DNA of 24,647 nucleotides from Octopus sinensis. Its lineage: Eukaryota. Position 1 is the stretch's first letter. Each line of letters opens with the position of its first letter. Shown piece after piece: positions 1,180-19,580 of the stretch. The notes beneath the pieces were generated by a model, which searched no databases, was not told the DNA's origin, and saw nothing but the letters and a program-made list of their open reading frames with translations. The translations under genes and the position numbers were made by a program. Where the stretch lies: assembly GCF_006345805.1 (NCBI RefSeq), contig NW_021836504.1, positions 1 through 24,647 on the forward strand. The letters are read 5' to 3'.

Positions 1180-1402
1180 TATTGGTCTTGAATTTTGACA
1201 CAAAAAGGCCAGCAATTTCAGGGAAGCGGATAAGTTGATTACATAAACCTCAGTGTTTAACTGGTAATTATGTTATTGACCCCCGTAAAGATGAAACGCA
1301 AAGTCGACCTCTGCGGAATTTGAACTCAGAACGTAGTAACAGACGAAATACCGCTAAGCATTTTGCTCAGCGTGCTAAAAGATTCCGCCAGCTCGCCGCC
1401 TT
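1180..1402 (-). mobile_element. tRNA-derived SINE, family A
   Basis: Reverse complement starts GGCGGCGAGCTGGCGGAATC (A box), has GAGTTCAAATTCCGC (B box) and a TTTCATCTTTACGGGGGTCAATAA core that resembles the Meta/MESC-type SINE domain from memory. Many homologous copies occur in the window. Confidence 0.85.
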
Positions 1403-4711: not shown

Positions 4712-4781
4712 ACTTGCATCAGTCATATGACTGCGGCCATGCTGGAGGACTGCCCTAAAAGGCTTTAGTCGAAGAAGTCGA
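4712..4781 (-). mobile_element. SINE family B, 3' tail fragment
   Basis: CCAGCATGGCCGCAGTCATATGACTG motif on the minus strand. Confidence 0.7.
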
Positions 4782-5513: not shown

Positions 5514-5543
<30 letters not shown>

Positions 5544-5545
<2 letters not shown>

Positions 5546-5952
5546 CTCTCTTACTCTTTACTTGTTCAGTCATTTGACTGCGGCCATGGTGGAGCACCGC
5601 CTTTAGTCAAACAAACCGACCCCGGGACTTATTCTTTGTAAGCCCAGTACTTATTCTATCGGTCTCTTTTGCCGAACCGCTAGGTGACGGGACGTAAACA
5701 CACCAGCATCGGTTGTCAAGCAATGCTAGAGGGACAAACACAGACACACAAACATATACATGCACATACATATACATATGCATATATACGACAGGCTTCT
5801 TTTCAGTTTCCGTCTACCAAATCCACTCACAAGGCTTTGGTCGACCCGAGGCTATAGTAGAAGACACTTGCCCAAGATGCCACGCAGTGGGACTGAACCC
5901 GTAACCATGTGGTCGGTTAGCAAGCTACTTACCACACAGCCACTCCTGCGCC
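5544..5952 (-). mobile_element. tRNA-derived SINE, family B, full length, CORE-like domain
   Basis: Head GGCGCAGGAGTGGCTGTGTGG, B box GGTTCAGTCCC, CORE-like TTGGGCAAGTGTCTT, internal microsatellite, stem-loop tail. Confidence 0.88.
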
Positions 5953-5970
5953 TATATATATATATTCATA

Positions 5971-6318
5971 GGCGCAGGAGTGGCTGTGTGGTAAGTAGCT
6001 TGCTAACCGACCACTTTGGGCAAGTGTCTTCTACTATAGCCTCGGGCCGACCAAAGCCATGTGAGTGGATTTGTTAGACGGAAACTGAAAGAATCCCGTC
6101 GTATATATGTATATTTTTGTGTGTCTGTGTTTATCCCCCCAATCATCGCTTGACAACCGATGCTGGTGTTTGGGTCCCCGTCACTTAGCGGTTCGGCAAA
6201 AGAGACCGATAGAATAAGTACTAGGCTTTCAAAGAATATGTTCTGGAATCGATTTCCTCGACTAAAGGCTGTGACCCAGCATGGCCATAGTCAGATGACT
6301 GAAACAAGTAAAAGAGTA
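5971..6318 (+). mobile_element. SINE family B with the B box deleted, head-to-head with 5544-5952
   Basis: Same head, CORE-like domain and tail; ~32 bp missing after GACCAC. Confidence 0.88.
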
Positions 6319-6319
6319 C

Positions 6320-6354
<35 letters not shown>

Positions 6355-8401: not shown

Positions 8402-9430
8402 TTGTTGTTGGCATCCTTTTTGTCTCGGGAGACAATGGAGTTGCGCATAAAATAATCTAGTCCGGCTTTTTCATTTCATGTCCTAATACATCTGCTGTGG
8501 CTGTGTAGTCCTATCCTGGACAAACACTCCCTCTGGCAGGTGCCGCAAATGTAGCGAAGACTTTGCCTGGCTGGTTGTAATGTCATACTTTCTTGTTGAC
8601 GTCTTTTCTTGTCTTTCTATTTCTCCTCTCCCTCTATGTCACTCGTTTGTGTTCCCTCTTTTACGGTACGTCGCCAATCTCCATGGTTGCTGGCAACTGC
8701 TTCCCAGTTGGTAATATTGATGTTGCAGGCATTCATGTCCCTTTTGCAAACATCCTTGTATCGTAAGAACGGTCTTCACACAGACCTAGCGCCTCTAGCA
8801 AGCTCTCCGTTGAGTATGTCCTTAGGGATTCTGCCATCTTCCATACGGCTAACATGTCGAAGCCATCTCATACGTCTTTGTGTGAGGAGTGTAAACATGC
8901 TTGGTATTCCTGCTTGCTTGAGGACATCTTTGTTGGGGACATGATTCTGCCATTTGATGCGAAAGATTTTCCGGAGGCAACGCAGGTGAAAGATATTTAG
9001 GCGACGTATGGCGTCGTATGACGTGTGTATAGCGTCCAAGTCTCACTTCCATACAGTAGAGTGCTAAGTACACATGCCTGGTAAATCATTTTTGTGGTCT
9101 TGGTCAGCTTATTGTTGTCCCATGCCCGTTTGGAGAGTTGGGCCATCACACCAGCTGCCTTGCCAATGCGTATATTGAGCTCAGTATCAAGGGATAGGTA
9201 GTAGGTGACGGTAGAGCCAAGATAGGTAAATTTCTCCACTTCCTGTAGTCTGTGGTCTCCAATATGTATGTTTTGGATGGTCGATGTAGCCTGACCCATG
9301 ATGTTGGTCTTCTTGAGGCTAATAACTAAGCCAAAGTTGCCACATGCTTGCTCAAAACAGTTGATGAGCCTTTGTAGGGCTTCTTCTGTGTGTGATACCA
9401 GAGTGGCATCATCAGCAAATTGCATCTCCC
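8402..9430 (-). mobile_element. 5'-truncated RTE-clade LINE (reverse transcriptase C-terminal half and 3' end), decayed
   Basis: FADD motif, FTYLGS, RIGKAA, LLYGSETWT, LNIFHLRCLRKI, RRMRWL.HV.RMEDGRIPKDIL.GEL, RYKDVCKRDM across frameshifts; 3' stem TGTCTC/GAGACA and a CAACAACAA tail. Confidence 0.93.
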
Positions 9431-10811: not shown

Positions 10812-11564
10812 AGCCGGGAACCAGCCATGCTGAATGTGGCTAGGGACATGGCGGGGTGGTGGGGGTTTACTGATGCATTTAGGCCCGGCCCCAGGCGACT
10901 ATAGACGTCACCATGTAGAGAGCCGACCCATCACGGTTTCCTTGCTAGCCTGTAAGGGAGATCAGCCTCCCCCCCGAAATACGGATGCTACACACGGACC
11001 GGTTTCGAGGTGGTCCCTCTCGTCAGCGCATGGCAAGCACCGTTCTTCGTTGAGGGACTTCCTCCACAGGCTAGAATAATATAGATTTTCACTGTAAACA
11101 CAGTCACTGGCGTCTAAAATCTGTTCGATAACAATAATAAATCTCTAAGCGAGGTATAAACAGTAACTGCTCTGTAATATAAGCGGGACCAGCCATCTGA
11201 ATGTGGCTAGGGACAGGGCGGGGTGGTGGGGGTGTTACTGATGCATTTAGTCCCAGGCGACTATAGACGTCACCAGGAGAGCCGACCATCACGGTGTCCT
11301 TGCTAGCCTGTAAAGGGAGATCAGCCTCCCCGAAGATACGGATGGTCTTCCACACGTATCTTCGGGGAGCTGATCTCCCTTTACAGGCTAGCAAGGACAC
11401 CGTGATGGTGTCGGCTCTCCTGGTGACGTCTATAGTCGCCTGGGCTAAATGCATCAGTAACACCCCCACCACCCCGCCCTGTCCCTAGCCACATTCAGAT
11501 GGCTGGTCCCGCTTATATTACAGAGCAGTTACTGTTTATACCTCGCTTAGAGATTTATTATTGT

Positions 11565-11567
<3 letters not shown>
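10805..11567 (-). mobile_element. Retrozyme-like hammerhead repeat: partial unit, one full 360-nt monomer and an inverted partial copy, inside (TA)n
   Basis: 10805-10996 is a diverged direct repeat of 11175-11356 (period 360 at the cleavage site); 11355-11567 is the reverse complement of 11128-11340; hammerhead at 10985-11040. Confidence 0.8.
10985..11040 (-). ncRNA. Type I hammerhead ribozyme with an intact canonical core; predicted cleavage between 10997 and 10996
   Basis: GUGCUUGC-CAUGCG-CUGACGA-GAGG(GACCA)CCUC-GAA-ACCGGU-C^CGUGUG-UAGCAU: all conserved core bases present, stem I 6 bp plus extension, stem II 4 bp, palindromic stem III ACCGGU, GUC triplet. Confidence 0.88.
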
Positions 11568-12011: not shown

Positions 12012-12552
12012 CAATCGCCAGAAAAAACCAGAGGAATTTTCTTTCTTGGTGCTCCTGGTAGCACAGGTAAAACATTTGTAACATTGCTTCTCTGCAAGGT
12101 AAGGTAACAAAAAATTGCAGTTACTGAACCATTATCAAGGTTGATTGTGAAGGTATTATCTCCAAAAAAAAACGGCGAGCTGGCAGAAACGTTAGCACGC
12201 CGGGCGAAAGCCGTATTTCGTCTGTCGTTACGTTGTGAGTTCAAATTCCGCCGAGGTCGACTTTGCCTTTCATCCTTTCGGAGTCGATAAATTAAGTACC
12301 AGTTACGCACTAGGGTTTATATAATCGACTTAATACCTATGTCTGTCCTTGTTTGTCCCCTCTGTGTTTAGCCCCTTGTGGGTAATAAAGAAATAGGTAT
12401 TATCACCTAATGTGACAGTAGCTACTATCATTACTGGATGTGTCCCTGGGCAAGAGGTTTTCATTCCAAGAATTAAAATCAAACCAACAAATATACCATT
12501 TGAGGTACAATTTCCAGTGCGACTTTGCTTTGCAATGTCTATTAATAAAGCA
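12012..12552 (+). pseudogene. Helitron RepHel PIF1-type helicase remnant, internally deleted and SINE-interrupted
   Basis: GIFFLGAPGSTGKTF (Walker A; Helitron FFLDAPGGTGKTF), then RLIVKVLSP / VLSPNVTVATIITGCVPGQEVFIPRI..PFEVQFPVRLCFAMSINKA (Helitron QFPVRL.FAMSINKAQGQ). Confidence 0.88.
12172..12394 (+). mobile_element. SINE family A inserted in the Helitron remnant with a 13-bp TSD
   Basis: TSD AGGTATTATCTCC (12151-12163) and AGGTATTATCACC (12395-12407); helicase homology resumes after the insert. Confidence 0.9.
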
Positions 12553-12661: not shown

Positions 12662-12881
12662 GTATTGGATTCAAATTCCTGCACAAGGCCAGAAATTTAA
12701 GAAAGGTGTTCAAGTCGATTACATCGATTCCAGTGTTCAACTGGTACTTACTTTATCAACCCGGAAAGTGATGAAAGGTAAAATCAACCTCGGCGGAATT
12801 TGAACTCCGAACGCAAAGGCAGATGAAAAGCTGCTAAGCATTTTGCGCGGCGTGCTAACGATTCTGCCAGCGAGCTGCCTT
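12662..12881 (-). mobile_element. SINE family A
   Basis: Head, B box and core match other copies. Confidence 0.85.
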
Positions 12882-12895
12882 ATTGCACCGTATAG

Positions 12896-13065
12896 ATATT
12901 GGTTTCAAATTTTGGCACAAGGCCAGCAAGTTCGGAGGTGGGGGGGGGGAAGTCGTTTACGGTGACCTCGTTATTCAACTAGTACTTATTTTATCAACCC
13001 TGAATTTGATGAAAGGCAAAGTCAACCTCTGCGGAATTTGAACTCGTCTGCCAGCAAACTGCCTT
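12896..13065 (-). mobile_element. SINE family A with an internal head deletion
   Basis: Core and B box present; sequence between B box and A box missing (AACTC|GTCTGCC). Confidence 0.8.
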
Positions 13066-13602
13066 ATTGCGTTTTATAAATATAGAACTTGTAACTCCAG
13101 ATTGTCAGTGATATGTCCAACAGCATGTGAACGTTTTCGAAATGCTTGGCTTTCTTTGGGTTTCAAGGGAGAGCACTGCATTTCGTGACTGCATATTTAT
13201 ACATTGTAGGATACAACTTTTAGTTTGCTCTACGGTGTTTTTATCTTTTATTCGTTCCAGTCATTTGACTGTGAGTATGCTGGTGCTGTTTCTATTTTAT
13301 TACATCCTCATTCCCCGATTACTCCGCGGCGACTTTGTGTATCATTAGCACCACGCCATCTTAGAACGAATTGTCAGTCATGTGAGTTTCCGAAAATTTT
13401 AATGGGGCTATAAATCCCAATATTTCATTACATCTAGTGAATGAATATATGTTTTAAGCTAGTACATACAGCTGTGTTTTTATCTAGCGATCAAAATTTT
13501 GTTTATGGCGATATTTCAAAGAGAAACAATGAGAGTTATTTTACAAAAAAAAAATATTGTGACAGCTTTGAAATTATGTATTTATTTTTTTAATTTTATC
13601 TA

Positions 13603-13632
13603 GTTTCAGCTCACGAGCTGTGGCCATGCTGG

Positions 13633-13637
<5 letters not shown>
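13603..13637 (-). mobile_element. Orphan retroposon 3' tail
   Basis: TGCCCCAGCATGGCCACAGCTCGTGAGCTGAAAC, the same motif as the CR1-type and SINE B tails. Confidence 0.65.
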
Positions 13638-13815: not shown

Positions 13816-13964
13816 CATGAATACACAGGCGCGCACGCGCAGATATTAAATGCATAAATGTATGTCATTCGTGAATGCATGTATATATGCCATAATCAAA
13901 CTCAAACGAACAGAAATGTTAGATCGTTCATAAATATGCACATTAATAAATCCTGAAATCCTTT

Positions 13965-14160
13965 AAAATGTTTCAGCCCGAAAGCTGCGGCCATGCTGGG
14001 TCACCACCGTTCAATGTGCTACACTAGTATGTGAAAGCACCTCTGATACGTGGCACTTGGTCAACAAGGGAATTCGACGCCGCTGCCCGCATCTGTGTTT
14101 CCTGCCGAGGGGTAGGTTCATCTGGAACCCTGACAAGAGATCCAGTTTAGTTTTAAACTC
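13965..14160 (-). mobile_element. 3' end of a CR1-type LINE (ORF2 C-terminus, stop codon, 3' stem-loop)
   Basis: EFKTKLDL/frameshift/RVPDEPTPRQETQMRAAASNSLVDQVPRIRGAFTY* (stop 14024-14026) fits the invertebrate CR1-group pattern FK..LD..L..VPDEP...RAA.SNSL..Q recalled from memory; followed by CCAGCATGGCCGCAGCTTTCGGGCTGAAAC. Confidence 0.65.
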
Positions 14161-14839: not shown

Positions 14840-14860
14840 ATATATATGTATATGTATATA

Positions 14861-15493
14861 TGATATGTATGTATGTATGTACCTTTGTATGTATAAATAA
14901 TATGATATATCTAGTTTTGTACTGATGTTTGAATTTTTCGAAATCCCTTATCTCTCTTCCCTTTTCCCTTCTCCTCTCTATCTCTCTCTCTCTCTTAATC
15001 AATCTGTCTATCTATCCATCTATCAACTTATATATAAAAATATCCCATAAACATTGCCTCGCTCTCTTTCATTTATTCGATCACTAACTCCTCACATATT
15101 CAATCGATCATTCGATAAATCACTTAAATATTATTTTGCTTTTGCTTATGTGTATTGAAGTGAGTGTATATGCTTGTGTGTTTGCATAGAGATATTGCTA
15201 ACTTCCATATGTTACATATGTACACACGTACGGGTTGGCATAGGCGCGAATATATGTGTATGGGAATCTCTCTATGTGAGAATATGTGTGTGTATATATA
15301 CAGGCATGTATATGTGTTTGAAAACATTCGTTAATGAGTATGCATAAATATTACATACGCACATACATAAATGTTCGTAATTAAGCCTAAATTTTGTATG
15401 GAGATTTACTATACAAGCAGCGGTACATACATCCATCCATACATACATACACTCAAATATACACACATACATATATATATCTATATCTATATC

Positions 15494-15532
<39 letters not shown>

Positions 15533-15534
15533 TA

Positions 15535-15580
<46 letters not shown>

Positions 15581-16389
15581 CATACACCCATACGTTCACA
15601 TATGTTTGTGTGTGAGTCTGTGTAAATGACCAGATAAGAAGAGAAGAAATGAGAGAGAGAATAGAGATTTATTCCATTGTTGACAGCTGTTTCGTAATCT
15701 GTTAGTTACATAAGCAACGCTACACCATCCGTCATATATATATATATATGTTATTGATGTATGTAGTACCTTGTATTATAAACTAATATGATATATCTAG
15801 TTTTGTACTGATGTTTGAACTTTTTCGAAATCCCTTATCTCTCTTCCTCTTTTTCCCTTCCTCCTCTCTCCTCTCTCTCTCTCTTAATCAATCTGTCTAT
15901 CTATCCATCTATCAACTTATATATAAAAATATCCCATATAAACATTGCCTCGCTCTCTTTCATTTATTCGATCACTAACTCCTCACATATTCAATCGATC
16001 ATTCGATAAATCACTTAAATATTATTTTGCTTTTGCTTATGTGTATTGAAGTTGAGTGTATATGCTTGTGTGTTTGCATAGAGATATTGCTAACTTCCAT
16101 ATGTACATATGTACACACGTACGGGTTGGCATAGGCGCGAATATATGTGTATGTATGAATCTCTCTATGTGAGAATATGTGTGTGTATATATACAGGCAT
16201 GTATATGTGTTTGAAAACATTCGTTAATGAGTATGCATAAATATACATACGCACATACATAAATGTTCGTAATTAAGCCTAAATTTTGTATGGAGATTTA
16301 CTTATACAAGCAGCGGTATATACATCCATCTATACATACATACACTCAAATATACACATACATACATATATACATCTATATCTACTATA

Positions 16390-16469
<80 letters not shown>

Positions 16470-16640
16470 TATATACATACCACATACGTTCACATATGTT
16501 TGTGTGTGAGTCTGTGTAAACTGACCAGATAAGAGAAGAGAAATGAGAGAATAGAGATTTATTCCATTAGTTGACAGCTGTTTCGTAATCTGTTAGTTAC
16601 ATAAGCAACGCTACACCATCCGTCATATATATATATATAT
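14861..16640. repeat. Tandem duplication of ~886 bp (about 14861-15748 and 15755-16640)
   Basis: TATGATATATCTAGTTTTGTACTG at 14901 and 15787; both copies end CTACACCATCCGTCATATAT; differences are mostly small indels. Confidence 0.92.
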
Positions 16641-16651
16641 TGAATATACAT

Positions 16652-16771
16652 GCTTACGGCCATATCATGTTGAAAGCACCGGTTCTAGTTTGATCACCGA
16701 AGTTAAGCAACATTGAGCCTAGTTAGTACTTAGATGGGTGACCGCTTGGAAAGCCCAAGTACTGTAAGCAT
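16652..16771 (+). rRNA. 5S rRNA-derived sequence, full length (120 nt), probably a pseudogene or SINE head
   Basis: GCTTACGGCCATATCATGTTGAAAGCACCGG...GATCACCGAAGTTAAGC...AGTTAGTACTTAGATGGGTGACCGC...GTACTGTAAGCAT; boxes A and C present; several CpG-type changes disturb stems. Confidence 0.9.
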
Positions 16772-16835
16772 TCCATTTTATAACAATGGTGCCCCAGCTG
16801 ACCGCAGATTTAAAGCTGAAACGCTTAAGAGAAAA
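16772..16835 (+). mobile_element. Retroposon 3' tail directly downstream of the 5S copy
   Basis: GGTGCCCCAGC-TGACCGCAGATTTAAAGCTGAAAC..AAGAGAAAA aligns with the SINE B and CR1-type tails. Confidence 0.7.
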
Positions 16836-16847
16836 TATATATGAATA

Positions 16848-18082
16848 TACCAGGTTGAGACAAATGTTTTTTTCGTGTTTCAATCTTTATTTAATAGTTC
16901 AAACAAATTACGAAGAGCGTTTATTTATCAAAATTTATCCAATCATATTCCGTTGTCTGTTGCCATCGTTATGTCTGAAGCTAAATTTCTCGCTTATACC
17001 ATTTGCCTGGTTCAGAAGCAAAAGAAACCCCTGCACCGGTTTGCAACCTTACTCACTTTGTCGAACCTCCGGCTGTGAAGGGGATGAGCCGTGGCCCAGA
17101 AAAAGTAGAAATCTGATGGTACAAGGTCTGGATTATAGGCAAGGTAAGGCAGCGCTTCCATCCCTTCAAGTTCCTCAAGTTTGCGCTGGGTGACATTGAT
17201 GGTCTGTGGTGTGGGGAAGGGGCGTTGTCATATTGTAATAATGCACATCTTTGATTGACCATTGACGAGTAGCTTTCAAAGCATCATATACTCGCTGAAG
17301 TTATTGGGCATAAAGGTTAGCGCTCAGAACATGCACATCTGGGACAAGTTCAAAGTGCAACGCCACCTCGAAATTACACCAAATCACATAACATAACATT
17401 CTGTTCAAACTGCCCGGAACTAAGCTATTGATTTTTCTTATTTGGATAATGAAAATAAATGAAGTTTTCATCCCCTGTTATAGTTCGACGCCAATGACGG
17501 GCATCTCAAGGATTTGCCAGCAGCTGTTTGTAAATGTTCATACGTCGTTGAGCCTGGTCATGAAGGGCTTCTCAACAACGTCTATTCACAAGGTTGAGCT
17601 TTTGGAGGTGTCTATTGATGGTGCTTTGTAAAGGACCAAGTTCTGTCGACCATGTACGAGTGCTTGTGCTTGGCTCAACCATTTCAAACAAGGCCACATC
17701 TTCTACATCAGAAGGTCTCCCTCGCCTTGGATTGCCTTTGAGGATCGCATCACTTTCCTAGAAACGTCTGAACTAGTTTTATGCTACACATTTGTTAACA
17801 GTTCCTAGGCCTTTTACATCATTTATTTCTTTTGCCACTGCCATCAATTCTTCCTTTTCCACATGTAGCGTAAAATGGCTCTAATTGCAATTATTTCACC
17901 ACTCATTATCAAAGCTTTAAAATTAAGAATAACCAATAAATGTTTATATGTTATATATGAAAACAACGTATCAACAATCCAGGAATCATTGCACAACAAT
18001 GAAATCAGTGATATAACATGGAAGTACTAGTTGCCAAAAATCATCAGTGAAAATCCGAAAAAACTTTTGACTCACCCTGGTA
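16848..18082 (-). mobile_element. Full-length (~1.24 kb) decayed mariner DNA transposon
   Basis: TIRs TACCAGGTTGAGACAAATGTTT and AAACTTTTGACTCACCCTGGTA (3 mismatches), flanked by TA. Confidence 0.92.
16921..17906 (-). pseudogene. Mariner transposase pseudogene
   Basis: MSGEIIAIRAILRY.., RRGRPSDV, ITGDENFIY, LLQYDNAP, YNPDLVPSDF (mariner TGDEKW, HDNARPH, YSPDLAPSD); many stops and frameshifts. Confidence 0.9.
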
Positions 18083-18365
18083 TATGCACACCCCATATAT
18101 ATAATTGTGATGTAACACAAAGAACTGACTACACTTTCGGACTTTCCATGTCAAGTTAAGACACTAGACTCTACTGTATAGCAAAGAGTTTCATCATATA
18201 GTCACAGACAATAGATGTATTCGGCAGATTCCACTCCTTACAAATACTAGAATTATCTTATATGAATTGCATTAATGAAGTGATAACAGTGGATGAATAC
18301 AAATTCTGGTAAAAAGGTAAATACAATAAAATAAATAAAATAAAGGTTAAAACATTATATTTACT

Positions 18366-18574
18366 ATCTTTTTACTTGTTTCAGTCATTTGACTATGGCC
18401 ATGCCGGAGCAACGCCTTTAGTCGAGCAAATCAACACCATGACTTATTCTTTGTAAGCCTAGAACTTATTCTATCGGTCTCTTTTGCCGAACCGCTAAGT
18501 TACGGGGACGTAAACACACCAACATCGGTTGTCAAGCGATGCTGGTGGGGGGGACAAACAACGCACACACATTA

Positions 18575-18629
<55 letters not shown>

Positions 18630-18828
18630 ATATATTATATATATATATACATATATACGACGGACTTCTTTCATGTTCCGTCGTATATATATATATATAA
18701 CATATATACGACGGACTTCTTTCAGTTTCCGTCTACCAAATCCACTCACAAGGTTATAGTAGAAGACACCTGCCCAAGGTGCCACGCAGAACCATGTGAT
18801 TGGTAAGCAAGCTACTTACCACACAGCC
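18366..18828 (-). mobile_element. SINE family B with internal deletions and a small inversion-duplication
   Basis: Tail, body and head match family B. Confidence 0.88.
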
Positions 18829-19063: not shown

Positions 19064-19279
19064 TGGCTCTGTGGTAAGTAAGTAGCTTGCTTACCAAACA
19101 CATTGTTCTGGGTTCAGTCCCATTGCGTGGCACCTTGGCAAGTGTCTTCTAGTATAGCCTCGGACCGACCAAAGCTTTGTGAGTGGATTTGGTAGACGGA
19201 AACTGAAAGAAGCCCGTCGTATATATGTATGTATGTGTGTGAATATATAATATATATATATATATATATATAATATATA

Positions 19280-19311
<32 letters not shown>

Positions 19312-19324
19312 TGTGTGTGTGTGG

Positions 19325-19357
<33 letters not shown>

Positions 19358-19580
19358 CATGTATGTATGTATGTATGTATGTATGTATGTATGTATGTAT
19401 GTATGTGTGTATATATTTGTGTGTCTGTGTTTGTCCCCCAACATCGCTTGACAACCGGGCTGGTGTGTTTACGTCCCCGTAACTAGGCTTACAAAGAATA
19501 AGTCCTGGAGTCGATGTCTTCGACTAAATGCGGTGCTCCAGCATAGCTACAGTCAAATGACTGAAACAAGTAAAAGAGTA
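19064..19580 (+). mobile_element. SINE family B with an expanded internal microsatellite
   Basis: Head with B box GGTTCAGTCCC, CORE-like domain, tail CAGTCAAATGACTGAAACAAGTAAAAGAG. Confidence 0.88.

What the first reader, a model, noticed from the sequence alone, without database searches (positions are those of the whole stretch)
16641..16850. 5S rRNA fused to a LINE-type tail: candidate 5S-derived SINE (SINE3)
Seen: a solitary full-length 5S copy (16652-16771) is followed within ~17 nt by the GGTGCCCCAGC..GCAG-stem-CTGAAAC tail and a purine-rich end. TGAATATACAT directly precedes the 5S G1, and TGAATATA follows the tail at the point where the mariner inserted, a possible TSD but of low complexity. 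Known: 5S-derived SINEs exist but are much rarer than tRNA SINEs. Inference: an ~185-bp 5S-headed SINE using the CR1-type machinery. Caveat: a T4 run (16776-16779) lies between head and tail and could terminate Pol III, so a one-off chimera is also possible.
Basis: partly seen in the sequence, partly recalled or inferred. Interest (0 to 1): 0.75.

Follow-up and report, generated by a model that had tools for sequence, protein, structure and literature searches.

The report
Decayed 5S-headed retroposon (SINE3-type) copy
A complete 5S ribosomal RNA copy fused to the short 3' tail that the abundant SINEs of this (octopus-like) genome use was pasted in as one unit by a LINE reverse transcriptase; it is most likely an old, dead copy of a 5S-derived SINE, a known though uncommon kind of mobile element.

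Summary
Rfam finds one full-length 5S rRNA at 16652-16770 (94 bits). Sixteen bases later comes a 45-nt tail (16788-16832). It belongs to a tail family with nine copies in the window and a hairpin supported by compensatory changes. Once the nested mariner (16850-18080) is removed in silico, the unit is flanked by a direct repeat: TGAATATACAT/TGAATATATAT, or 17/19 with one gap. The window's own background gives this p~0.01. The 5' repeat abuts 5S G1. Four of 34 5S base pairs are broken, all by transition-type mismatches, so this is a decaying retrocopy, not a working gene or an array member.

I could not do the decisive test, a genome-wide count of copies with the same head-tail junction. No cephalopod DNA is reachable in any collection; control searches with the abundant SINE tail also returned nothing. 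A 2026 Octopus vulgaris repeat annotation lists four "5S" SINE families covering 9.8 Mb. That makes one copy per 25-kb window unsurprising, though part of the 9.8 Mb may be 5S rDNA arrays.

Best reading: a member of a 5S-derived SINE family (0.6). Main rival: a one-off template-switch chimera (about 0.27). "CR1-type" is unsupported. Interest is modest.

The parts
16641..16651 (+). 5' target-site duplication TGAATATACAT. It extends to 16633-16651 (ATATATATTGAATATACAT) if one gap is allowed.
   Evidence: Abuts 5S G1. Matches the 3' repeat 10/11 ungapped and 17/19 gapped. Empirical frequency in this window is 1-3%.
16652..16771 (+). 5S rRNA-derived head, full length. By position homology to the Xenopus internal control region (established knowledge): box A about 16701-16715, intermediate element about 16718-16723, box C about 16731-16748.
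   Evidence: Rfam RF00001 94.2 bits, model 1-120. The MFE fold gives the three-way junction, z=-2.6. 30 of 34 model pairs are canonical; the 4 broken pairs are all C.A or A.C. The strongly conserved consensus residues of box A and box C are matched in the cmscan alignment.
16772..16787 (+). 16-nt linker TCCATTTTATAACAAT containing the T4 run (16776-16779), a potential Pol III terminator 5 nt past the 5S 3' end.
   Evidence: Read directly. Its origin (5S trailer, tail donor or filler) is unresolved. Alignment to the other tails is weak in this part.
16788..16835 (+). LINE-type 3' tail GGTGCCCCAGC-TGACCGCAG-ATTTAAAG-CTGAAAC-GCTTAAGAGAAAA. The hairpin is 16805-16818 (CAGAT/TTAA/AGCTG, one A.G mismatch), followed by AAAC.
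   Evidence: Profile of the tails: 33 bits, E=1e-9. 62-74% identical to the other tails, closest to 13960-14004(-). Across 7 tails the hairpin has 97% of cells paired and 2 pairs with compensatory changes; slid controls give 9-43%.
16836..16841 (+). AT-rich stretch between tail and 3' repeat. It belongs either to the 3' end of the element or to the longer version of the target-site duplication.
   Evidence: The boundary is ambiguous because of the TA repeats.
16842..16849 (+). 3' target-site duplication, first part (TGAATATA). It continues as TAT at 18083-18085 after the mariner.
   Evidence: In-silico excision of 16850-18082 restores TGAATATATAT.
16850..18080 (-). Nested mariner-like DNA transposon with a frame-shifted transposase. 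It is not part of the element, but it shows the element is older than this insertion.
   Evidence: TIRs and TA duplication. Mos1 transposase match E=3.4e-7.
18083..18085 (+). 3' target-site duplication, last 3 nt (TAT).

Best explanation
This is an old, inactive copy of a 5S rRNA-derived SINE (SINE3-type), about 185-190 bp long, made of a complete 5S head, a 16-nt linker and a roughly 48-nt LINE-type tail, with no separate body.

Inferred life cycle: a source copy is transcribed by RNA polymerase III from the type-1 internal promoter in the 5S head (box A, intermediate element, box C), starting at G1. The transcript must run past the linker into the tail. The tail's hairpin-AAAC module is the same module carried by the abundant tRNA-derived SINEs of this genome. 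A partner LINE reverse transcriptase recognises it and copies the RNA into a nicked AT-rich site by target-primed reverse transcription, which leaves an 11-19-bp target-site duplication.

Shown here: the head, the shared tail with a covarying hairpin, a start exactly at +1, one repeat pair around the whole unit, decay of the head, and a later mariner insertion. Inferred, not shown: membership of a multi-copy family, Pol III transcription, and the identity of the LINE. The founder of such a family most plausibly arose when the reverse transcriptase switched template from a tail-bearing RNA to a 5S transcript.
For: The 5S head is full length. The tail belongs to a family with 9 copies in 24.6 kb. 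Its hairpin is kept by compensatory changes, UA<->CG and CG<->UA, with 97% of cells paired against 9-43% when slid. The 5S tail is only 62-74% identical to the other tails, whereas the abundant SINE's tails are 85-87% alike. It is therefore a separate lineage, not a fresh piece of the abundant SINE.

The direct repeat encloses head plus tail and abuts G1: 10/11 ungapped, 17/19 gapped, p about 0.01-0.03. Chance placement of an unrelated tail within 20 nt downstream in the same orientation is about 0.4%, from the tail density. Four broken helix pairs, all transition-type, point to a neutral retrocopy.

Literature: the O. vulgaris annotation has 4 '5S' SINE families covering 9.83 Mb of 2.8 Gb, which is about 0.3 copies expected per window of this size (PMC13282606). 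HaSE3 in Helicoverpa has the same design, a 5S head sharing its 3' part with a tRNA SINE of the same genome (PMC3272025).
Against: No second copy with this head-tail junction was seen, and none could be looked for. The T4 run between head and tail would stop much Pol III transcription before the tail. Two full-length copies of the abundant SINE have no T4 in sense over 460-516 nt. The element has no body, so it looks just as a chimeric 5S retrocopy would.

Part of the annotated 9.8 Mb may be 5S rDNA arrays: 7 'recent insertions' cover 42 kb. Whether those families carry this tail is unknown. That the window comes from an octopus rests on my recollection of the octopus SINE consensus, not on a tool result.
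Confidence: 0.6

Rival explanations
1. One-off or very low-copy chimeric retrocopy. During target-primed reverse transcription of a tail-bearing LINE or SINE RNA, the reverse transcriptase jumped after about 50-60 nt onto the 3' end of a 5S primary transcript and copied it to its 5' end. The product never propagated.
For: The architecture is what template switching predicts: a sense, full-length small RNA at the 5' side, the 3' end of a retroposon at the 3' side, and one repeat pair. The T4 run sits 5 nt past the 5S end, where a 5S gene's own terminator would lie. The head may therefore be the whole primary transcript, U-run included. There is no body. Helices I-III are fully paired apart from one pair, so the head is close to a real 5S RNA. 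Such chimeras are documented and do not propagate (PMC11838501; PMC4824008).
Against: A random 25-kb window would rarely hold one of a handful of unique chimeras, whereas 5S-class SINEs are annotated at 0.35% of an octopus genome. Human 5S/L1 chimeras are mostly antisense and truncated, unlike this one. The 8 nt between the T-run and the tail are unexplained.
Confidence: 0.27
2. Two independent events: a 5S retropseudogene or orphon, and a 5'-truncated SINE or LINE tail that later landed just downstream.
For: Tail-only fragments are common here, for example 13594-13636(-) and 13244-13286(-). The T-rich linker could attract an endonuclease.
Against: The expected chance of a tail in the same orientation within 20 nt is about 0.4%. 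The direct repeat encloses both parts rather than the tail alone. No separate repeat flanks the tail.
Confidence: 0.06
3. A working solitary 5S rRNA gene, with the sequence after 16771 being ordinary spacer.
For: The copy is full length and folds into the 5S three-way junction. The conserved promoter residues are kept. The TA-rich upstream sequence could mimic a TATA element. T4 lies at the expected terminator position.
Against: It is not in an array: there is one 5S in 24.6 kb. Four helix pairs are broken by C.A or A.C mismatches, three of them in helices IV/V. GC is low at 45%. The upstream boundary coincides with a direct repeat exactly at +1. The downstream sequence is a retroposon tail.
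Confidence: 0.03

Closest known systems
SINE3 of zebrafish and other 5S rRNA-derived SINEs (Kapitonov & Jurka 2003; fruit-bat, springhare and beetle families, as listed in PMC3272025)
   Same: 5S-derived head carrying the type-1 Pol III promoter, a 3' tail shared with LINE-mobilised elements, and target-site duplications.
   Different: Those families have a body between head and tail and no terminator after the head (from my knowledge of the zebrafish family, not checked here). Their copy numbers and partner LINE are documented. Here there is no body, a T4 run follows the head, the copy number is unknown and the LINE is unidentified.
HaSE3 of Helicoverpa armigera (PMC3272025)
   Same: 5S head joined to the 3' part of a tRNA-derived SINE lineage of the same genome. 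Origin was proposed to be a template switch from SINE RNA to 5S rRNA. It is low in copy number relative to the tRNA SINEs, which was explained by the dependence of type-1 promoters on upstream signals.
   Different: HaSE3 shares body and tail at 94% identity with HaSE1, and its partner LINE (HaRTE1) is known. Here only about 48 nt of tail are shared, at 62-74% identity.
Chimeric retrocopies of small RNAs fused to LINE-1 3' ends (U6/L1, 5S/L1; Buzdin et al. 2003; PMC11838501)
   Same: Small Pol III RNA at the 5' side, retroposon 3' end at the 3' side, inserted as one unit with 7-15-bp duplications.
   Different: The mammalian cases depend on L1 and poly(A). 5S/L1 cases are mostly antisense and truncated, and each is unique and non-propagating. 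Here the 5S is sense and full length, and the tail is a hairpin type without poly(A).
tRNA-derived SINEs of octopus (OK, OR1, OR2; Ohshima & Okada 1994, cited in PMC4824008) and the abundant SINE seen in this window
   Same: The same tail module, CCAGC..CCGCAG-hairpin-CTGAAAC..AAAAGAG, and therefore presumably the same LINE machinery.
   Different: Their heads are tRNA-like with a type-2 promoter, and they have a long body with an internal microsatellite. Which published family the window's copies belong to was not checked.
'5S' SINE class in the Octopus vulgaris repeat annotation (Bonar et al. 2026, PMC13282606)
   Same: A 5S-related interspersed repeat class in what is probably the same genus: 4 families, 9.83 Mb.
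   Different: Only counts are published in the text held here.

Membership tests
5S rRNA-derived SINE (SINE3), by the SINEBase definition (PMC3531059) | At least 60% identity to 5S rRNA over at least 60 nt, with the internal promoter region retained. | tested here: met
   Rfam 5S model matched end to end at 94.2 bits. The conserved box A and box C residues are present.
5S rRNA-derived SINE (SINE3), by the SINEBase definition (PMC3531059) | Short (<1 kb), interspersed, not tandem. | tested here: met
   The unit is about 185-190 bp and solitary in 24.6 kb. There is no 5S in the neighbouring ~890-bp tandem repeat.
5S rRNA-derived SINE (SINE3), by the SINEBase definition (PMC3531059) | [quoted passage not shown] | not testable with these tools
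   No cephalopod DNA is in the reachable collections. The abundant SINE tail, used as a control, gave 0 hits in metagenome, viral and genome contigs. The 5S pattern gave 0 and the protein-word searches gave 0. The only support is indirect, from the literature.
5S rRNA-derived SINE (SINE3), by the SINEBase definition (PMC3531059) | 3' tail shared with a partner LINE. | tested here: inconclusive
   The tail is shared with 8 other retroposon copies and has a covarying hairpin. No LINE with this 3' end was found. The only RT fragment in the window (8997-9425, minus strand) shows no such tail.
5S rRNA-derived SINE (SINE3), by the SINEBase definition (PMC3531059) | Retroposition hallmarks: starts at the transcript's +1 and is flanked by target-site duplications. 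| tested here: met
   TGAATATACAT/TGAATATATAT abuts G1; 17/19 gapped, p about 0.01.
5S rRNA-derived SINE (SINE3), by the SINEBase definition (PMC3531059) | Pol III can transcribe from head to tail, with no internal terminator. | tested here: not met
   This copy has T4 at 16776-16779. It may be specific to this old copy, since another SINE copy here carries a private T5. The result therefore says little about a family consensus.
Template-switch chimeric retrocopy (Buzdin type) | Full-length small RNA in sense fused to the 3' end of a retroposon, with a single pair of duplications. | tested here: met
Template-switch chimeric retrocopy (Buzdin type) | A unique junction that does not propagate. 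| not testable with these tools
   No genome of the source species is available.
5S rDNA array member / functional 5S gene | Tandem array with a regular spacer, and all helices intact. | tested here: not met
   Single copy. 4 of 34 pairs are broken. The downstream sequence is a retroposon tail.
   A hairpin is present. No terminal short tandem repeat appears in any of the tails. No CR1 sequence was available for comparison.

The most novel reading that the evidence does not exclude
The copy preserves the birth state of a SINE: a complete 5S primary transcript, still carrying its own terminator U-run, welded by template switching to a bare LINE recognition hairpin. If the genome holds a family that keeps this T4, its propagation would have to rely on routine Pol III read-through of a minimal terminator, or on transcription from outside. 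That would make it a natural system for studying how a terminator-bearing chimera becomes a self-propagating SINE in a lophotrochozoan.
Probability: 0.12. Interest if true: 0.5.

Novelty: new member of a known kind. Interest (0 to 1): 0.3.

Why it matters
5S-derived SINEs are far rarer than tRNA-derived ones. I found no curated description of one from a cephalopod or any other mollusc, only a '5S' class in an automatic annotation of O. vulgaris. A minimal head-plus-tail element that shares the recognition hairpin of the dominant octopus SINEs would show that the same LINE machinery has recruited a second kind of Pol III promoter. It would also give a clean example of module shuffling by template switching.

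For annotation the practical point is simple. This 5S hit should be masked as a retroposon copy, not counted as a 5S rRNA gene.

Tried and rejected
1. Genome-wide copy count. The 5S 3'-half pattern in metagenome contigs gave 0 hits. The control pattern from the abundant SINE tail also gave 0 in metagenome, viral and prokaryote-genome contigs. These collections therefore hold no cephalopod DNA, and the negatives carry no information.

2. Finding other copies through spurious ORFs. Neither the peptide across the 5S-tail junction nor a SINE-derived ORF found anything.

3. Fetching octopus contigs through protein look-ups. Three window ORFs are not on record. RT homologues reach only 58-67% identity, and the contig fetched (L001) carries no octopus repeats.

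4. Paralogous empty site. The ~890-bp tandem repeat upstream ends in the (TA)n just before the 5' repeat. It never continues past the insertion point, so it gives no empty site.

5. Literature search by sequence strings of the tail and SINE head found no paper. A search for an octopus 5S rDNA sequence found nothing usable, and Walker & Doolittle 1983 is not held. The head could therefore not be compared with the real cephalopod 5S rRNA.

6. Bacterial-type promoter/terminator scan: irrelevant hits only.

7. Considered and rejected: a 5S array spacer, a functional orphon gene, and chance juxtaposition (see the rival explanations).

Full report
**What is there.** Rfam finds exactly one RNA family match in the window: 5S rRNA at 16652-16770 on the + strand, at 94.2 bits (gathering score 38) and E=1.6e-19, covering model positions 1-120. 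There are no tRNA genes and no second 5S fragment.

The 120-nt copy folds into the 5S three-way junction (-35.9 kcal/mol, z=-2.6 against shuffles). I read the cmscan alignment pair by pair. Thirty of the 34 modelled pairs are canonical. The four exceptions (9-110 C.A, 68-107 C.A, 70-105 A.C, 78-99 C.A) are all one transition away from the consensus pair. GC is 45% and CpG observed/expected is 0.66. The head therefore sits very close to a real 5S RNA but carries unrepaired transition damage in helices I, IV and V. That is the pattern of a neutral copy, not of a gene in use.

**The downstream part.** After 16771 come 16 nt (TCCATTTTATAACAAT, with T4 at 16776-16779). Then follows GGTGCCCCAGCTGACCGCAGATTTAAAGCTGAAACGCTTAAGAGAAAA (16788-16835).
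- The exact 20-mer is unique in the window, but the module is not.
- A relaxed pattern finds seven copies, and a stricter gapped pattern finds four against zero expected.
- A profile built from the aligned tails finds nine, on both strands.
- Several of these are the 3' ends of long SINE copies with a tRNA-like head and an internal microsatellite, for example 19065-19580 (+) and 18367-18826 (-).
- From memory I recognise those as the abundant octopus SINE. No tool confirmed the organism.

In the seven-tail alignment (A1) the core is a 5-bp hairpin with a 4-nt loop, followed by AAAC. 97% of the cells are paired, against 9-43% when the 3' strand is slid. Two of the five pairs change on both sides (U-A to C-G, C-G to U-A). 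The single unpaired cell in the matrix is the A.G in the 5S element's own hairpin (16808/16815), which again fits a decayed copy.

The 5S element's tail is 62-74% identical to the others, closest to 13960-14004(-). The tails of the abundant SINE are 85-87% alike. The 5S tail is therefore a separate branch of the tail family, not a recent piece of the abundant SINE.

**Boundaries.** The sequence at 16850-18080 is a mariner-like transposon.
- Its terminal inverted repeats are CCAGGTTGAGACAAATG and CCAGGGTGAGTCAAAAG.
- It has a TA duplication at 16848-49 and 18081-82.
- It carries a frame-shifted Mos1-like transposase on the minus strand (E=3.4e-7).

I joined the two flanks in a script. With one gap it becomes ATATATATTGAATATACAT against ATATATA-TGAATATATAT, 17 of 19.

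The window is full of TA-type microsatellites, so I measured the background in the window itself. A match of 11 nt with at most one mismatch at the right distance occurs at 1.6-3.4% of comparable positions. A local alignment score as high as the observed one occurs at about 1%. The 5' repeat ends exactly at the base before 5S G1. The repeat pair encloses head, linker and tail together.

Given nine tails in 24.6 kb, an unrelated tail lying within 20 nt downstream of a given point in the same orientation has a chance of about 0.4%. I conclude that head and tail entered as one RNA-derived unit that started at the 5S transcription start. The mariner came later.

**What it is not.**
- It is not a member of a 5S array. 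There is one copy in 24.6 kb. The ~890-bp tandem duplication just upstream (14842-15727 and 15728-16620) contains no 5S and simply ends in the (TA)n that precedes the 5' repeat.
- It is unlikely to be a working orphon gene, because of the broken pairs, the retroposition hallmarks and the retroposon tail in place of a spacer.

**SINE family or single chimera.** SINEBase defines a SINE by, among other things, at least 100 copies that descend from SINE source copies rather than from the cellular RNA (PMC3531059).
- No reachable collection holds cephalopod DNA. The octopus-type 5S pattern gave nothing in metagenome contigs. The control pattern from the abundant SINE tail also gave nothing in metagenome, viral or prokaryote-genome contigs.
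- Protein-word searches with the junction peptide and with a SINE-derived ORF found nothing.
- Window ORFs are not on record. The RT homologues come from other animals.

The evidence that remains is indirect.
- The curated-plus-automatic repeat annotation of Octopus vulgaris lists a '5S' SINE class of four families covering 9,831,953 bp of a 2.8-Gb assembly (PMC13282606, supplementary table 1). At about 190 bp per copy, that is roughly 0.3 copies per window of this size. Meeting one in a scan window is then expected, whereas meeting one of a handful of unique chimeras would be a roughly 1-in-1000 event.
- Two cautions apply. The same paper's 'recently active' 5S entry is 7 insertions covering 42 kb, which looks like tandem 5S rDNA, so part of the 9.8 Mb may not be SINEs. 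I also could not see the consensus sequences, so I do not know that they carry this tail.

**The T4 run.** A run of four T lies 5 nt past the 5S end, where a 5S gene's own terminator would be.
- On the family reading, it is either a private mutation of this old copy or a leaky terminator. Another SINE copy in the window has a private T5, while two full-length copies have none in 460-516 nt.
- On the chimera reading, it is the U-run of the 5S primary transcript onto which the reverse transcriptase jumped.

The two readings are not exclusive. The accepted origin of 5S-headed SINEs is exactly such a jump (Nishihara 2006 as cited in PMC4824008; HaSE3, PMC3272025). The second reading describes the founder of the first. 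Human 5S/L1 chimeras are mostly antisense and truncated and do not propagate (PMC11838501), which is unlike this sense, full-length case.

**Mechanism, with status.**
- Shown: the 5S head with conserved promoter residues, the tail module with a conserved covarying hairpin, a start at +1, a single target-site duplication, decay, and the nested mariner.
- Inferred from established knowledge of SINEs: Pol III transcription from the type-1 promoter (TFIIIA-dependent and sensitive to upstream context, hence usually weak after retroposition, as argued in PMC3272025), recognition of the tail hairpin by a stringent-type LINE reverse transcriptase, and target-primed reverse transcription at an AT-rich nick.
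- Unknown: the LINE.

**Comparison and verdict.** The closest described relatives are SINE3-type elements, and above all HaSE3, which joins a 5S head to the 3' part of a tRNA SINE of the same genome. This element differs in having no body, a shorter and more diverged shared tail, and a T4 after the head. I found no curated description of a 5S-derived SINE from a cephalopod or other mollusc. The known octopus SINEs OK, OR1 and OR2 are tRNA-derived, and only the annotation class in PMC13282606 points to one.

I rate it a new member of a known kind, of modest interest. Probabilities: SINE family member 0.6, one-off chimera 0.27, independent juxtaposition 0.06, functional gene 0.03. The remainder is unassigned.

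Noticed in passing
window 14842-16640: Tandem duplication of about 890 bp (units 14842-15727 and 15728-16620), each ending in a (TA)n tract. It looks like unequal exchange between TA microsatellites. The third (TA)n directly precedes the 5S element's target-site duplication.
   Followed up: partly
window 16850-18080: Mariner-like DNA transposon nested in the 3' target-site duplication. It has 17-nt imperfect terminal inverted repeats, a TA duplication, and a frame-shifted transposase on the minus strand similar to Mos1 (E=3.4e-7).
   Followed up: yes
window 11128-11567: Near-perfect palindrome of about 440 bp, with outer arms of 126 nt at 99% complementarity and a centre near 11347. It may be a foldback element or an inverted duplication, and it is followed by a (TA)n tract.
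   Followed up: no
window 4719-4747(-), 5557-5597(-), 6271-6315(+), 13244-13286(-), 13594-13636(-), 13960-14004(-), 18369-18412(-), 19532-19577(+): Eight further copies of the same hairpin-AAAC 3' tail. Some end long tRNA-headed SINE copies with an internal microsatellite. Three have no recognisable head and may be truncated SINE or LINE 3' ends. The density is about one per 3 kb.
   Followed up: partly
window 8997-9425 (-): LINE reverse-transcriptase fragment (142-aa ORF). The best public relatives are only 58-67% identical and come from other invertebrates. No tail of the hairpin-AAAC type lies downstream of it.
   Followed up: partly
window 1232-1327, 1649-1744, 12712-12807, 12950-13045 (+); 1579-1737 inverted with 12243-12401: Another dispersed repeat family of roughly 100-160 nt (AAGTCGATTACATCGACCCCAGTG...GGCGGAATTTGAACTC), 66-89% identical between copies. 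Probably a further SINE or MITE family.
   Followed up: no
window 5525-5691 and 6177-6343: Two copies of the abundant SINE's 3' half in inverted orientation, 485 nt apart (81% complementary), forming a large potential hairpin.
   Followed up: no
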